Below, one piece after another: positions 27,242 to 61,193 of a DNA stretch of 64,000 nt; the first letter of the stretch is position 1; every line of letters starts with the position of its first letter. The stretch is from Octopus bimaculoides (Eukaryota). The stretch covers positions 82,123,532 through 82,187,531 of the forward strand of contig NC_068985.1 in assembly GCF_001194135.2 (NCBI RefSeq), written 5' to 3'. Under the pieces are notes generated by a model, which did not search any database, was not told the origin of the DNA, and saw only the letters and a program-made list of their open reading frames with translations. Position numbers and translations under genes: made by a program.

Positions 27242-27996
27242 CTACTCTGGAAGTTCTTCTTCTGGGGAGTTGCTTTCAATGACATCCTGGAGAAGTTCGT
27301 CCACAGAATCTCCCTCTGCACTTATCCCCTTCTCTTCAAAATCCAAGTTCGGAACCAGAATTGCCAGCATACGGACTACATTGCCACGAAGTGTTTTTAA
27401 TTTTTCAGCATGTTTACAGTCATCGAGACCATTTACATCAGAACACTGCTGGTTGTGGCCATTAGCATGACCATGTCCAATACGTGAAGACCGTATGCTA
27501 AGATCCATGGCTTGGTTGGAGCCGTTATCTAAAGGTTCCATCTTCACAGTTCCCCTTGAAGCCTGGTACTGAAGAGGCCCGTGATGGTGTGCTGGCGGAA
27601 ATCCAGGACCCGGTGGGCAATGATTCTGCAGGAGATCAGCGCAGTGGGGTGAAGAGTGGCCGTTCAGGATACTATGTTGCTGTGGACTAGATTTTAGTTG
27701 GTTTAGAGTATTATCAAGAAACGAAGCCTTAAGAGGCTCAGAAAATTTACTTGATAGGTCAAGGCCAGCTGTTAAACTCGCACTGAGAACAGCTGAAGTT
27801 GGTGGTATCTTGAATAGGGGCATATCAGTACCCGGGACTGAAGCAGTCATATAACCTATCCCCCTGTGAGCTCTGTGCCGTTTCTCTTTGATGTAGTAAC
27901 CCATTCTGCCCTCATGCTTATTAGTAATGTGGCTTTTCAAGCTATGGCTCTGGCTGTACTGTACTCCACAAGCACCACAGATATAGGGACGCTCAC
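27242..27996 (-). CDS. Terminal coding exon of a multi-exon C2H2 zinc-finger protein (last finger, linker, MORC3/4-like C-terminal helical tail); upstream exons not identified
   Basis: Minus-strand polypyrimidine tract and acceptor ...ctcttccacAG|GT GAG CGT CCC TAT ATC TGT. The phase-1 start reads [T]GERPYICGACGVQYSQSHSLKSHITNKH (canonical TGE(K/R)PY linker plus C-X2-C-X12-H-X4-H) in frame with ORF 27242..27940, open to the stop at 27242-27244. GC content and complexity are much higher than the flanks. Confidence 0.93.
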
Positions 27997-28040
27997 CTGT
28001 GGAAGAGAAAGAGAGAGAGAAGAAAAAGAAAAAATAGAGT
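27997..28040 (-). other. 3' splice acceptor and polypyrimidine tract of the zinc-finger terminal exon
   Basis: The minus strand reads ...tttttctttttcttctctctctctttctcttccacAG immediately before the GERPY codons. Confidence 0.85.
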
Positions 28041-29454
28041 CGTATTAGTAGTATAAATCAGATGAAAGAGAAATGAAATGAATAAAACATCTAAAACCTA
28101 AGGCAAATTAAAACTCAGGAATTAAAATAATAAATTTGTGATTTCTGTGTAAGTGTGTGTGAACAGGCACAATATGAATGGTTAAGCAATGGTTAAAGAC
28201 CATCAGGTCCTAGGTTTGATCTCACTGACATCTTGTGCCTGAAATTAAAAAGGTGAAGTTTTGTCATACACTATTCTGTGTCATACTGATTCTGTCTGAC
28301 AATTACATTAAGACTACATATGTTTGTGGAATCACTCAACCACTTACAAGTTCAATCAGGTAATTCAATTGATCAAACAACCGAATCCTCATTGTTGAAC
28401 GACAGAGATACAACCATACACCACCACTTACACATACACACACACGCACACATATGATGAGCTACTAGCTTTAAAGAATGTGAATGAAAATATATGCAAA
28501 CAAACAAAAATATAGAAAAATAAGTATAACTGTTGAAGTATTTGTGCTGTGTGTGTATGGGATGCATGTAACCTATGGCTACCTAGGGCTGAAGATTATT
28601 CAAAATGGAGCTGAAATCATGTTCTCTTGGATTTATAAATGTTTTTTCCTTATTGTGCCATTTCAATCACAGTAAGTTTATGGATATTAAAGTATGTGTA
28701 TATATTTATTAAATGTAATGTGTATATGTGCACATGTGTAGCTATATGTTTATCTATATATGTATTAATTATTTATTATGTTGTATAGTATTTTCTATCA
28801 TATAACTTTATGTGAAATAATATAGCATTATTGTTGCTGCAGTTGTTATTAATATTACTATTGTTCTGAAATCATATTGCAAAACAAATCAAATATTGAA
28901 CACAGAAAAAAAAGAAGTAAAGAGAAATAAAATCACATAGATATACTTCTATTACAAACACGTTGTGAATTAAAATTTAATTCATTTGACAAAAGAAAAA
29001 ATATTAACAACAAATGATAACAGAAACCAAAAAGAATAATAAGGAAATAAGTTACAGAAACAGAACAAGCATATAAGCAAACATGAAAAGCAAGCTAGAC
29101 TAAAAGCAACATCTAAATAGACAAAAAGGAGGATATAGAAAGAATTCAAGCATACAACACATTGTGTGGGATAAGTTATAAGAAATGTAAAGAAAATACA
29201 TTATAACATTCAATGAAACGATATAGAGAACTTTGTGTCCCTAGGATAGAATTGAATTTGAGTTGAATTGGTTATACTGAAATTTCATAAAATAATAATA
29301 ATAATAATAGTAGTAGATTATGACAGACAGTGTGAAGTTGGAGTTAGGAACAACATTTGTGATAAATAAGGAGTTTGTTAACCAGCAGAATCTGAAAATG
29401 AAATAGAAGATAACAGAACAACATTGTACAATGTTTTGACTGTGATGCAAAGAA

Positions 29455-45870: not shown

Positions 45871-46261
45871 AAAAAAATTCTATGTAAAGAAAACATTTCT
45901 ATTGAAAAGTGTCAAATATTTTGACCAATTAAATTACAGGACTACAATGTTTCTCCATTTAACTTTTGGGGAGAGAGTTCAATTATAAATACCAGTTAGA
46001 CATTAGGATCAATTCAATTGATTAACATTTAAATACTGAACAGTATATATAAAGGATAAAATCCTTTTAAGAGCAGAAAAATTTGCCGGCAACCAGCAAA
46101 TGTATTGTTCTACAATACATCTTAATGCTTCAAAAACAAACTTATGTTTGTTTACCTATGAGGTAATCAATTGATTAAGTTGCATTCTCTTCATACGTAA
46201 ACAAAGCAAATGACTACCATTGCAATCATCATCATCACCATTATTATTATTATTATTATTT

Positions 46262-46585
46262 AAGATGTTGCACAGTATGCAATATCGTGATGTTGTTGAC
46301 TGAAGATATTCTGTCTACCGGGGGTCAAGTTACAACAAGGACCTTTGACTAACAGTACTTTACACATTATGTGTGCAGCTCCAAGTAATGCCAGTTTTTG
46401 TAATACCCCTAGACTGTAGGGTATTTCTGACACTTCCAGATGTTTCTTCAGGTTGGGTGGTATTGAACCCAATGCTCCGATGACAACAGGGACAACCTTT
46501 ATGCTTGACTCTCGTAGCTTCCACATCTTGGCGATCCCAATTTTCAGGCCTCCATATTTATCAATTTTTTCTCTTTCTTTGATGA
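46262..46585 (-). mobile_element. 5'-truncated R4/Dong-like non-LTR retrotransposon (C-terminal REL endonuclease region plus 3' end)
   Basis: The frame reads IIKEREKIDKYGGLKIGIAKMWKLRESSIKVVPVVIGALGSIPPNLKKHLEVSEIPYSLGVLQKLALLGAAHIMCKVL. This matches the EK..KY..L...W....V.VVPVVIGALG.....LQK.ALLG.A.I..KVL pattern of R4/Dong/NeSL-type REL domains. Confidence 0.8.
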
Positions 46586-47457
46586 TAATTATTATTGTTG
46601 TTGTTGTTGTTGTTGTTATTATATTTTAAAAGGATTGCCATAACTCCTCACGAAGGTAAACTGACAATTGTCTATTATTATTATTATTATTATCATCATC
46701 ATCATCATTATTATTATTTTTATTATTATAATTTATGATTATTCCTATTATCATTATTGTTGTTATTCTTCTTTCTGGTATATCTGAACAATAAACATTC
46801 CTCTCGAATAAAAAGCTCATTACAAGGGAGCAGTAATATCAGCAAAAGATGATGCTTATTGTTTATATATTATTTAGTGTGTTCCAGGTCATATTAACCA
46901 GCAAAGCTGGATCTTGTGTCATTCTGAGTTCCAAACTGCATTATCAGCAGTAAAGTATGCCTGAGAGAACTATAGAATGGTCAAGCAGCTGTAAATAATA
47001 TAGCAAAGCCAATGCACAAATACAGCAGCTAAGTGCAGTAACAGTAGTGATAGGCACAGTAGTAGATTTAGCAGCAGGATGGTGGTGGTGTGTAAGTCTT
47101 GGGGTTGCAGTAGTGTTAGCAATAGTATAAGAAGTATGAGAGTAGTATTTAGTTAGTCAATCAGTCAGTCAAGATTGCCTTTTTGTTCAATGTTTCATAG
47201 ATTACATGTTACAGATTATGATACAGCTGGCTTTTTAATGCTGTAAGACTTGAAGGCAGAAAAGAGATTGTAAAAGCTACACATAGGTGACAAGATCAGC
47301 ACCAGAGGCACACCTGTCTAGAAATTAAACAGCTGTTCTTTTGAAAACTGTTATTTCAAAAGAAAGAAAATTCGAACAAACAAAAGCAAGAGGAAATGGT
47401 TAAATAAATATGCACAAACACATTGAAGAAAGAAAAAGTGAGGAGAGATTATTAATC

Positions 47458-59926: not shown

Positions 59927-61193
59927 CAAGGACTGAACAAAATAATGGAAACACCTAGCATCATAGCATCATAATTTTGAAATATCTATAAAACCATCAA
60001 AAGCTTGTTTATATTTGTTTTTTGATTTATTATTAGTGTTGCTTAATATGTTTGGCTAAATTTACTGTTTCTTTTCAGATATCATCAGAAATTGGTAATT
60101 AAAATTCATTAGAATGACAGATTTATCGGACTTTCAAAGAAGTCAAATTATTGGTGCTCGTATGGCAGGTGCTAACATAACAAAAACAGCCAAAATGTTT
60201 GGTGTATCAAGAAGTACTATCTCAAAAGTAATGACAGCCTTTAAGAAAGAGGGAAAAACTTCCTCGTTGAAACAAAACTCCGAAAGAAAACCAAAACTTT
60301 CAAATAGAGACTGTCGGATTCTTACATGAATTGTTAGAAAGGATCACAAAAGTGCAGCTCCCAAAATTACTGCAGAGCTTAATGGCCACCTTGAGAATCT
60401 AGTTCCCACAAAAAATGTTCACTGGGAACTGCAAAAAGCCAGATTTCATGGGAGGGTTGCAATCAGAAAACCACTACCTACAAAAACAAATGCTGCAAAG
60501 CATTTTGAGTGGAGTAAAATGCTACAGAATTGGTCCCTAGAGCAGTGGAAGAATGTTATTTTCTCATCCTTTACCTTATTTCTGACCACTAACTGAGTAT
60601 ATGTGTGGAGACAGCCAAAAGAAGCATTTGACCAAGACTGCCTTCTTCCAACTGTTAAACATGGAGGATGATCTGTGATGATCGGTGGGTGGGGACTGTA
60701 TCTTGGAAATCCGTCGGCCTAATGTTTTCCCTTCATGGCAGAATTAATAGTTAAGACTATTTAAGCATTTTATCTGATCAAATTCATCTTATGGTTGCAG
60801 AACTGTTTCTGGAGGGAAACACAATATTTCAGGATGATAATGCACCAACTCACACAACTAAACTTGTTACTGAATGGTACAAGGAACATTTTAGGGAAGT
60901 TGAATATCTTATCTGGCCATGGCAGCCCCCTGATCTCAATATTATTGAACATTTATGGTGCATTTTAGAAAAACAATTAAGGAGTCGATATCCTCCACTA
61001 TCGTCACTACAAGAACTAGAGACTGTTTTAGCTGAAAAATGGACAAAAATTCCTTTGGAAACAATTGAAACTTTGTATGAGTCCATACCTCATAAAATTC
61101 AAGCTGTAATTACTGCCAAAGGTGGTCCTACCCCATATTAAAATAAATTTGTTTGAAATTTTAAGGTGTTTCCATTATTTTGTCCAACCCCTG
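59927..61193 (+). mobile_element. Full-length (1267 bp) degenerate Tc1/mariner DNA transposon with DD36E spacing
   Basis: 30-bp TIRs: 59927-59956 CAAGGACTGAACAAAATAATGGAAACACCT versus the reverse complement of 61164-61193 CAGGGGTTGGACAAAATAATGGAAACACCT (26/30 identical). TA dinucleotides flank both ends (59925-6, 61194-5), and a transposase pseudogene lies inside. Confidence 0.95.
60114..61141 (+). pseudogene. Tc1-like transposase pseudogene (HTH DNA-binding domain plus DDE domain)
   Basis: N-terminal MTDLSDFQRSQIIGARMAG...GVSRSTISKV HTH, then WKNVIFS-SFTLF, TVKHGG*SVM, FQDDNAPTH and WPWQPPDLNIIEHLW motifs. Contains several in-frame stops, a frameshift near 60690, and loss of the first catalytic Asp. 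Confidence 0.92.

What the first reader, a model, noticed from the sequence alone, without database searches (positions are those of the whole stretch)
27275..27403. C2H2 zinc-finger protein ending in a MORC3/MORC4-like C-terminal dimerisation tail: candidate sequence-specific MORC-recruiting adaptor
Seen: one exon carries a linker-preceded C2H2 finger and ends in KLKTLRGNVVRMLAILVPNLDFEEKGISAEGDSVDELLQDVIESNS-stop. Recalled knowledge, to be verified: the extreme C-terminus of human MORC3 reads approximately [44 protein letters not shown]. By eye, 12/22 residues are identical in the first block (KL..LR.NV...LA..VP.LD) and 7/12 in the second (D.VDE.L..V.E), at the same terminal position with a 2-residue gap. 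MORC GHKL ATPases silence transposons and compact chromatin, use C-terminal coiled-coil regions to dimerise, and carry CW rather than C2H2 fingers. Inference: this protein either homo-oligomerises through a MORC-type tail or heterodimerises with MORC, giving MORC DNA-sequence specificity. That would be a KRAB/SCAN/ZAD-analogous effector module in a KRAB-less invertebrate lineage. A MORC-ZF fusion gene is an alternative, since the upstream exons are unseen. I know of no described C2H2-ZF plus MORC-tail family, but I could not search.
Basis: partly seen in the sequence, partly recalled or inferred. Interest (0 to 1): 0.88.

Follow-up and report, generated by a model that had tools for sequence, protein, structure and literature searches.

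The report
Zinc-finger protein with MORC3-type tail
The last exon of a conserved mollusc three-finger DNA-binding protein ends in a ~47-residue helical module that is truly homologous to the extreme C-terminus of MORC3/MORC4 chromatin ATPases, a shared module that seems undescribed and may let the protein pair with itself or with MORC.

Summary
Window 27245-27996 (minus strand) is the last coding exon of a 757-aa three-finger C2H2 protein of an Argonauta genome. It carries finger 3, a poorly conserved linker and the tail KLKTLRGNVVRMLAILVPNLDFEEKGISAEGDSVDELLQDVIESN. One error: seven more residues (PEEELPE) precede the stop.

The homology is statistically solid:
- A profile built only from zinc-finger tails hits MORC3/4 C-termini at up to 60 bits.
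- A MORC-only profile scores this exon 48.7 bits.
- hhalign gives probability 98.9%, E 3e-17.
- Genome-wide searches of the host genome in both directions link this exon with MORC tails.

The gene has no GHKL, S5 or CW domain, so it is not a MORC fusion. It is the only tail-bearing zinc-finger locus detected in the genome, and its fingers are nearly invariant across molluscs. It is therefore not a KRAB-like expanding family. Named relatives occur only in molluscs, annelids and a brachiopod.

The tail has no Pfam family and no solved structure. AlphaFold2 predicts a helix-loop-helix. What it does is not shown. My best inference is a self-association module captured once from a MORC gene. Pairing with MORC remains possible, but the host MORC tail has diverged strongly.

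The parts
27245..27996 (-). Last coding exon (residues about 507-757 of a 757-aa protein): finger 3, a conserved post-finger segment, a poorly conserved linker and the MORC3/4-type tail
   Evidence: Open frame 27242-28057. tblastn of P0003 (Argonauta hians 'myoneurin-like X2') residues 506-757 maps to 28000-27245 at 98.4% identity. The exon begins at 27996, after AG at 27998-27997.
27997..28040 (-). Splice acceptor: polypyrimidine tract ending in cacAG. The intron upstream is about 56 kb, and the preceding exon lies outside the window.
   Evidence: Sequence read. The upstream exon is at G000:C5:82207472-82208950, minus strand. No other part of P0003 matches the window.
27914..27996 (-). (T)GERP linker plus the third C2H2 finger, YICGACGVQYSQSHSLKSHITNKH
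   Evidence: The pattern scan finds a single complete finger in the window at 27914-27979. Pfam zf-C2H2 matches weakly on the exon alone and at E 3.7e-10 with three fingers in the full protein. This region is 80-100% identical across 20 mollusc orthologues.
27848..27913 (-). Conserved post-finger segment EGRMGYYIKEKRHRAHRGIGYM
   Evidence: 62-80% column identity among mollusc orthologues. A similar segment (GNMEFYNLDKKSDSTRGRKSLD) follows finger 3 in the annelid-type relatives. No known family.
27416..27847 (-). Poorly conserved, low-complexity linker (residues about 557-700)
   Evidence: 15-36% identity among mollusc orthologues. No Pfam match.
27266..27412 (-). MORC3/4-type C-terminal tail module (residues 702-750): HAEKLKTLRGNVVRMLAILVPNLDFEEKGISAEGDSVDELLQDVIESNS
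   Evidence: hhalign aligns these 49 residues with MORC3/4 tails over 47 columns, probability 98.9%, E 3.1e-17. A MORC-only profile scores 48.7 bits. An amphioxus MORC tail searched against the host genome hits only here, E 4.7e-8. 70-87% identity among mollusc orthologues.
27356..27415 (-). Predicted helix 1 of the tail (residues 701-720, KHAEKLKTLRGNVVRMLAIL). It carries the invariant L..LR.N core and is preceded by an invariant Cys (residue 700) that MORC tails lack.
   Evidence: AlphaFold2 on alignment A1: helix at residues 5-24 of the 55-aa query, mean pLDDT 83.6. Invariant columns C4, L10, L13, R14 and L21.
27308..27355 (-). Turn and loop (residues 721-736, VPNLDFEEKGISAEGD) with an invariant Pro and a short helix
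   Evidence: AlphaFold2: break at 25-29, short helix 30-33, loop 34-40. P26 is invariant in the zinc-finger tails and in the MORC tails.
27269..27307 (-). Predicted helix 2 of the tail (residues 737-749, SVDELLQDVIESN)
   Evidence: AlphaFold2: helix 41-53. Invariant D43 and L46, matching the MORC block D.[VI]D[ED][IL]L.QV.
27242..27268 (-). Acidic end SPEEELPE followed by the stop codon TAG (27244-27242)

Best explanation
Shown. The feature is the terminal exon of a single-copy, two-coding-exon gene. It encodes a 757-aa nuclear-type C2H2 protein with three nearly invariant fingers, found in molluscs, annelids and brachiopods. Its last ~47 residues are homologous to the extreme C-terminal module of MORC3/MORC4-type GHKL ATPases. 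MORCs of cnidarians, hemichordates, amphioxus, vertebrates and molluscs all carry that module.

Inferred, history. The MORC module is much more widespread than the zinc-finger architecture, and all zinc-finger tails form one group. So the module was most likely copied once from a MORC3-like gene onto a three-finger protein in a lophotrochozoan ancestor.

Inferred, mechanism. The module folds as a small amphipathic helix-loop-helix. It probably works as a self-association unit, with two hairpins packing into a helical bundle, as the 'constitutive C-terminal dimerisation' end of MORCs is thought to do. In the zinc-finger protein this would make a dimer with 2 x 3 fingers reading a fixed DNA motif. 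The same surface could in principle also pair with a MORC3-like tail.
For: Gene model and architecture:
- The terminal exon is in the window and the single upstream exon lies 56 kb away.
- The product has three C2H2 fingers and no other Pfam domain.

Homology of the tail:
- phmmer E 1.9e-4 to a bona fide amphioxus MORC with HATPase_c_3, Morc6_S5 and zf-CW.
- The zinc-finger-only profile hits 109 of 121 MORC3/4 within 15 residues of the C-terminus, 27-60 bits, against at most 6.4 bits for 726 scrambled controls.
- The MORC-only profile scores all 72 zinc-finger proteins 29-52 bits.
- hhalign gives probability 98.9%, E 3e-17.

Independent genome-wide cross-checks:
- The only open-frame non-self hit of the tail in the 2.3-Gb host genome is the terminal exon of the host MORC3-like gene. 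It lies downstream of that gene's GHKL/S5 and CW exons on the same strand.
- The amphioxus MORC tail hits only the window exon.

Other support:
- Purifying selection: tail windows are 70-87% identical among 20 mollusc orthologues, against 10-30% in flanking regions.
- Single origin: the zinc-finger tails form one group with 99/98 support.
- Fold: helix 5-24, turn, helix 41-53, mean pLDDT 83.6.
- Literature: MORCs dimerise constitutively through their C-terminal coiled-coil region (PMC10952291). All MORCs have a predicted C-terminal dimerisation domain, which for MORC3/4 has never been studied in full-length protein (PMC11879086). MORC3 homodimerises through its ATPase and coiled-coil domains (PMC8627505, PMC4870562, citing Mimura 2010).
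Against: - No dimerisation was predicted or measured here.
- The papers I could read do not show which element of the MORC3 C-terminal region carries its constitutive dimerisation. It could be the long coiled coil upstream, with the tail doing something else.
- The natural tandem-tail protein P0080 gave an uninformative model, pLDDT 40.
- The single-capture scenario rests on a 56-column tree with long branches.
- It also rests on named taxa only. Most relatives come from unnamed metagenome or transcriptome records.
Confidence: 0.5

Rival explanations
1. MORC adaptor. The zinc-finger tail pairs with the tail of the host MORC3-like ATPase and brings it to a specific DNA motif.
For: - The two tails are homologous, and both sit at the extreme C-terminus.
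- The host genome has a MORC3-like gene that keeps a tail.
- The Argonauta zinc-finger and MORC tails share VPN(L/I)DF.E, whereas deuterostome and cnidarian MORCs have VP[DE]L.L.
- From my own knowledge, not checked here: MORCs are recruited by other factors, such as HUSH for MORC2 and ApiAP2 factors in Toxoplasma. PMC11879086 states that MORCs are localised by associated complexes.
Against: - In molluscs the MORC tail has diverged strongly and lost about 7 residues of the loop and second block. It scores 21.7 bits against the zinc-finger profile, versus 60 bits for amphioxus MORC, and has a branch length of 4.64.
- The Pomacea and Batillaria MORC tails are equally divergent.
- Meanwhile the zinc-finger tail stayed nearly invariant. 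Partners that pair like-with-like should co-vary.
- The shared VPN.DF motif is absent from the Pomacea and Batillaria MORC tails.
- No interaction data exist.
Confidence: 0.25
2. Shared docking motif. MORC3/4-type ATPases and the zinc-finger protein both use the tail to bind the same third partner, such as a conserved chromatin, SUMO-pathway or nuclear-body component, rather than each other.
For: - The zinc-finger tail is extremely conserved while the host MORC tail is relaxed. That fits a constraint imposed by a partner other than MORC.
- The MORC terminal exons carry classical SUMO-interaction-like motifs just upstream of the tail: VGVIDLTDDDD in Argonauta and DDDCIIIDDS in amphioxus. This places the region in a protein-interaction context.
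- The tail is a compact autonomous unit.
Against: - No candidate partner is known.
- A 47-residue amphipathic hairpin with a broad hydrophobic face is more typical of self-association.
- Nothing in the readable literature assigns a ligand to the MORC3 tail.
Confidence: 0.2
3. Chance or convergent resemblance of two amphipathic helices, with no common origin.
For: The region is short (about 47 residues) and helical. Such segments can converge.
Against: - Reciprocal profile scores of 29-60 bits against at most 6.4 bits for scrambled controls.
- hhalign E 3e-17.
- The same order of motifs, the same invariant Pro turn and the same terminal position.
- Reciprocal genome-wide hits.
Confidence: 0.03
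4. MORC-ZF fusion gene: unseen upstream exons encode GHKL and CW domains.
For: None after testing. The upstream exons were simply not visible in the window.
Against: - The one upstream coding exon, at G000:C5:82207472-82208950, covers residues 13-505.
- The full 757-aa product and its orthologues have only C2H2 domains.
- The MORC domains of this genome map to other contigs, C24 and C1.
Confidence: 0.01

Closest known systems
C-terminal end of MORC3/MORC4 (NXP-2/ZCWCC3 and ZCWCC2) GHKL ATPases
   Same: The last ~47 residues are homologous. They share the motif order L..LR.N[VI]..[LM]L....P.L[DN]. ... D.[VI]D[ED][LI]L..V[ILV], an invariant Pro turn and the same position at the very end of the protein.
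   Different: The protein has no GHKL ATPase, S5 or CW domain and no long coiled coil. It has three C2H2 fingers instead. An invariant Cys, usually as C.H, precedes helix 1 in the zinc-finger tails only.
C2H2 zinc-finger proteins with a dedicated protein-interaction domain (KRAB, SCAN, BTB/POZ, ZAD)
   Same: A DNA-reading finger array is combined with a separate, conserved protein-protein interaction module. SCAN, BTB and ZAD are dimerisation domains (established knowledge).
   Different: The module is C-terminal, unrelated in sequence and only about 47 residues long. Only one tail-bearing locus was detected in the genome, and its fingers are nearly invariant, so it is not a lineage-expanded, fast-evolving family. 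No Pfam KRAB, SCAN, BTB or ZAD hit.
MORC2 C-terminal coiled coil 3 dimerisation domain (residues 900-1032)
   Same: It sits at the C-terminal end of a MORC and is reported to form a constitutive second dimer interface (PMC11879086). It is the functional model for what the MORC3/4 tail may do.
   Different: Homology to the MORC3/4 tail was not tested, because I held no MORC2 sequence. It is much longer. The MORC3/4-tail profile finds nothing in PDB sequences.

Membership tests
MORC family (GHKL ATPases) | N-terminal GHKL ATPase domain (HATPase_c_3) | tested here: not met
   Pfam scan of the full-length orthologue P0003 and of P0005 finds only C2H2 families. The two coding exons account for residues 13-757 of the 757-aa protein.
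MORC family (GHKL ATPases) | S5-fold domain (Morc6_S5) and CW zinc finger | tested here: not met
   No hit in P0003. In the host genome these domains map to C24, C1, C26 and C3, not to the C5 locus.
MORC3/4-type C-terminal tail module (unnamed; no Pfam family) | Significant profile match to MORC3/4 C-termini | tested here: met
   MORC-only HMM: 48.7 bits, E 4.9e-8 at Z = 1.84e9. hhalign probability 98.9%, E 3.1e-17.
MORC3/4-type C-terminal tail module (unnamed; no Pfam family) | Location at the extreme C-terminus | tested here: met
   The module ends 7 residues before the stop. In 109 of 121 MORC3/4 proteins the match ends within 15 residues of the C-terminus.
MORC3/4-type C-terminal tail module (unnamed; no Pfam family) | Helix - Pro turn/loop - helix secondary structure | tested here: met
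   AlphaFold2 with 29 zinc-finger tails: H5-24, H30-33, H41-53, mean pLDDT 83.6. The MORC tails themselves were not modelled.
MORC3/4-type C-terminal tail module (unnamed; no Pfam family) | Mediates dimerisation (homo- or heterotypic) | not testable with these tools
   No multimer prediction or experiment is available. The tandem-tail protein P0080 gave pLDDT 40. The literature speaks only of 'coiled-coil' or 'predicted C-terminal' dimerisation (PMC10952291, PMC11879086).
C2H2 zinc-finger proteins | C-x2-C-x12-H-x3-5-H fingers with TGE[KR]P linkers | tested here: met
   One finger lies in the window. The full protein has three, Pfam zf-C2H2 E 3.7e-10.
KRAB/SCAN/BTB/ZAD-type zinc-finger families | N-terminal effector or dimerisation domain of that type | tested here: not met
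   No such Pfam hit in P0003 or P0005.
KRAB/SCAN/BTB/ZAD-type zinc-finger families | Lineage-specific gene expansion with diversifying fingers | tested here: not met
   Only one tail-bearing zinc-finger locus was found in the 2.3-Gb genome. Fingers are 93-100% identical among 20 mollusc orthologues.

The most novel reading that the evidence does not exclude
The tail is a portable MORC3/4 pairing module. Through it, a sequence-specific three-finger protein docks onto the C-terminal end of the host MORC3-like ATPase, or forms mixed assemblies with it. This would give a DNA-clamping silencer a fixed DNA address. It would be the first recruitment of a MORC through a transcription factor's mimicry of the MORC's own dimerisation end, and the first function assigned to the MORC3/4 tail.
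Probability: 0.25. Interest if true: 0.85.

Novelty: new variant of a known kind. Interest (0 to 1): 0.64.

Why it matters
MORC3 and MORC4 silence viral DNA and endogenous retroviruses. Yet their long C-terminal regions have been little studied, and biochemical and structural work on MORC3/4 has used N-terminal fragments (PMC11879086).

This finding shows that the last ~47 residues of MORC3/4 are an ancient, autonomous module. It runs from cnidarians to humans, and evolution has moved it onto a different kind of protein, a DNA-sequence-reading zinc-finger factor.

That has three uses:
- It defines a new conserved module to add to domain databases.
- It gives a compact, testable candidate for the second interface of MORC3/4, whether that is dimerisation or partner docking.
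- It gives a concrete hypothesis for how a MORC-type assembly might gain DNA sequence specificity in lophotrochozoans.

Even if the tail only homodimerises, it tells MORC researchers which residues to mutate: L..LR.N, the Pro turn and D.VDELL.

Tried and rejected
X-padding the query worked after two mis-sized regions.
- Pfam on the exon and on full-length proteins gives nothing for the tail.
- PDB sequence searches with the exon and with the MORC-tail profile find only generic zinc fingers or noise.
- Foldseek of the tail model against PDB gives no match, best E 8.
- Searching it with the Capitella relative was swamped by generic zinc fingers and said nothing about a second paralogue.
- The weak own-genome hit on C4 (E 0.49, with a stop inside) was taken as chance.
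- The second MORC locus, on C1, shows no tail in the 30 kb downstream of its CW exon. It may be a MORC1/2-type gene, or its end may lie further away.
- AlphaFold2 of the natural tandem-tail protein P0080, meant as a stand-in for a dimer, gave pLDDT 40 and is uninformative.
- Mimura et al. 2010, the primary paper on MORC3 dimerisation, is not held. Literature searches found no paper linking C2H2 proteins to the MORC tail.

Full report
WHAT IS IN THE WINDOW

The finding lies on the minus strand. Frame 27242-28057 is open. It translates to ...STGERPYICGACGVQYSQSHSLKSHITNKHEG...CKHAEKLKTLRGNVVRMLAILVPNLDFEEKGISAEGDSVDELLQDVIESNSPEEELPE-stop. A polypyrimidine tract ending in cacAG (AG at 27998-27997) marks the acceptor, so coding sequence runs 27996-27245 and the stop is TAG at 27244-27242. 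A pattern scan finds only this one complete C2H2 finger in all six frames of the window.

WHICH GENE IT IS

A length-padded search with the exon peptide found a 757-aa protein, 'myoneurin-like isoform X2 [Argonauta hians]' (P0003). It also found orthologues in many gastropods and bivalves under arbitrary automatic names. P0003 residues 506-757 map to window 28000-27245 at 98.4% identity, and nothing else of the protein maps to the window. A search of the host genome places residues 13-505 in a single exon at G000:C5:82207472-82208950, minus strand. That is about 56 kb upstream of the terminal exon and about 20 kb beyond the window's right edge. The genome is therefore an Argonauta, or a very close relative.

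The protein has three C2H2 fingers and no other Pfam domain.

Across 20 mollusc orthologues, per-window identity to the Argonauta protein falls into three classes:
- fingers: 93-100%
- tail (windows 701-720 and 721-740): 70% and 87%
- most other windows: 10-30%

IS THE TAIL REALLY MORC-LIKE?

Yes, on five independent lines.

(i) phmmer with the last 75 residues against 1.84 billion cluster representatives gave 59 hits at E < 1e-3. Most are zinc-finger proteins with the same tail. One hit, P0072 (E 1.9e-4), is an amphioxus protein. Its 90%-identity cluster mate P0082 (1112 aa) carries HATPase_c_3, Morc6_S5 and zf-CW, and ends ...KLKMLRRNVSRLIGVLVPELSLEDNDIDMESDSVDELLRQVLEANKNQ.

(ii) Using P0082 I fetched 120 named MORC3/MORC4 proteins. 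The motif is also present in MORC3/4 of sharks, bony fish, amphibians and reptiles, and in MORC3-like proteins of hemichordates and cnidarians.

(iii) An HMM built from 66 zinc-finger tails only matches 109 of 121 MORCs within 15 residues of the C-terminus. Scores are 60.4 bits for amphioxus (E 1.4e-11 even at Z = 1.84e9), 48-50 for hemichordates, 35-43 for cnidarians, 39 for shark MORC4 and 33 for human MORC3. The best of 726 reversed or shuffled controls scores 6.4 bits. Conversely, an HMM of 18 MORC tails scores all 72 zinc-finger proteins 29-52 bits and the window exon 48.7 bits.

(iv) Profile-profile comparison of the two alignments (A1 and A2) gives probability 98.9%, E 3.1e-17 over 47 columns.

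(v) Genome-wide cross-checks in the 2.3-Gb host genome:
- The zinc-finger tail finds itself, a weak hit that contains a stop codon, and one open frame on contig C24.
- That frame is a terminal exon ending ...KKRLNELRENVKRLIEIIVPNIDFGEHKIDDVVVEMIRINSQVNS-stop.
- It lies 4-12 kb downstream, on the same strand, of exons matching Morc6_S5 and zf-CW.
- Those exons are collinear with human MORC3 residues 16-440. In short, it is the last exon of the host's MORC3-like gene.
- In the other direction, the amphioxus MORC tail finds only one place in the genome: the window exon, E 4.7e-8, 51% identity.

WHAT THE MODULE LOOKS LIKE

Both families share the order L..LR.N[VI]..[LM]L....P.L[DN]., a short loop, then D.[VI]D[ED][LI]L..V[ILV]. 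AlphaFold2 on the zinc-finger tail alignment predicts helix 5-24, a Pro turn with a short helix, and helix 41-53, with mean pLDDT 83.6 and pTM 0.63. That is a compact amphipathic helix-loop-helix.

There is no Pfam family for it, no PDB sequence match and no structural neighbour. The zinc-finger tails differ from the MORC tails by an invariant Cys, usually as C.H and in molluscs often as C..C.H, just before helix 1.

DISTRIBUTION AND HISTORY

Named zinc-finger-plus-tail proteins come from:
- many molluscs
- annelids (Capitella, Paralvinella, Dimorphilus)
- the brachiopod Lingula

The rest are unnamed environmental or transcriptome records. The annelid-type proteins have the same layout but diverged sequence: three fingers, a basic segment after finger 3, a long linker and the tail.

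MORC tails occur from cnidarians to mammals. In a tree of 48 tails, the zinc-finger tails form one group (99/98 support). The amphioxus, hemichordate and octocoral MORC tails have short branches, and the Argonauta MORC tail has a very long one. The tree has few columns and long branches, so it only shows that a single origin is compatible with the data.

The parsimonious reading is one capture of a MORC3-type tail by a three-finger protein in a lophotrochozoan ancestor. After that the zinc-finger tail stayed close to the ancestral form, while mollusc MORC tails drifted.

HOW IT MOST LIKELY WORKS

This part is inferred, not shown. The literature states the following:
- MORCs dimerise ATP-dependently through the GHKL domain and constitutively through the C-terminal coiled-coil region (PMC10952291).
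- All MORCs have a predicted C-terminal dimerisation domain. For MORC3/4 it has never been studied in full-length protein (PMC11879086).
- MORC3 homodimerises through its ATPase and coiled-coil domains (PMC8627505 and PMC4870562, citing Mimura 2010, which I could not read).

The tail is the only strongly conserved element at the end of the otherwise disordered MORC3 C-terminal region (PMC6614601 describes that region as mostly disordered). A 47-residue amphipathic hairpin is unlikely to be stable alone.

I therefore favour a self-association module, probability about 0.5. In the zinc-finger protein this would give a dimer with six fingers and a fixed DNA specificity.

It is weakened by the strong divergence of the host MORC tail against the near-invariance of the zinc-finger tail.

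That same asymmetry fits a third reading, about 0.2: both proteins use the tail to bind a common conserved partner. The classical SUMO-interaction-like motifs just upstream of the MORC tails (VGVIDLTDDDD in Argonauta, DDDCIIIDDS in amphioxus) show that the region is an interaction hub.

COMPARISON WITH THE KNOWN

The protein is not a MORC, since the GHKL, S5 and CW tests all fail. It is a C2H2 protein. Functionally it resembles zinc-finger proteins with a dedicated interaction domain (SCAN, BTB, ZAD, KRAB). It fails the features of those families: a different, C-terminal module, only one tail-bearing locus detected, and invariant fingers. So the KRAB-analogous effector family idea is not supported.

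I found no paper linking C2H2 proteins to the MORC tail. Given the limits of the library, absence of a description is not proven.

VERDICT

The function (dimerisation, MORC pairing or partner docking) is open and directly testable. I rate it a new variant of a known kind, with moderately high interest.

Noticed in passing
window 60099-61141 (+): Decayed Tc1/mariner-type transposon. Three consecutive open frames in different phases match HTH_23/HTH_SB, HTH_Tnp_Tc3_2 and DDE_3, so the transposase is broken by frameshifts.
   Followed up: partly
L003 811-1647 (G000:C24:871340-872176, +), with exons at C24:856077-861365 and 867529-867660: The host's MORC3-like gene. Its terminal exon carries a classical SUMO-interaction-like motif (VGVIDLTDDDD) upstream of a shortened, fast-evolving tail. 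The amphioxus MORC has DDDCIIIDDS in the same position.
   Followed up: partly
G000:C1:97106020-97111054 (+); L011-L013: A second MORC locus (S5 and CW exons) with no recognisable tail in the 30 kb downstream. It may be a MORC1/2-type paralogue.
   Followed up: partly
L017 199-2552 (JGI metagenome 3300002579 contig); proteins P0237 and P0080: A eukaryotic contig of unknown organism. It encodes a C2H2 finger resembling finger 3, then a long disordered region, then two tandem copies of the tail. The gene caller split it into two genes at an ambiguous XX. This is a variant architecture with a duplicated tail.
   Followed up: partly
window 27413-27442 (-), residues about 692-701: An invariant Cys, usually followed by His at +2 and in many molluscs written C..C.H, directly precedes helix 1 in all zinc-finger tails and is absent from MORC tails. 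It could be a metal site, possibly shared between two chains. This is pure speculation.
   Followed up: no
P0003 residues about 245-260 and 300-316 (upstream exon, outside the window): Two conserved N-terminal motifs in the family: RSRRK(P/R)(T/S)LEDI(V/I) and an acidic Ser/Glu run followed by L.IDM, which looks like a phospho-SIM. Function unknown.
   Followed up: no
window 46260-46625 (-): An open frame ending ...VVPVVIGALGSIPPNLKKHLEVSEIPYSLGVLQKLALLGAAHIMCKVL. From memory it resembles the C-terminal end of retroelement ORF2 proteins of marine invertebrates. It has no Pfam hit.
   Followed up: partly
whole window: 5228 N bases in many assembly gaps, and very abundant TA/CA microsatellites and homopolymer-codon runs. 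This is typical of cephalopod genomes, and most long ORFs in the list are artefacts of these repeats.
   Followed up: no
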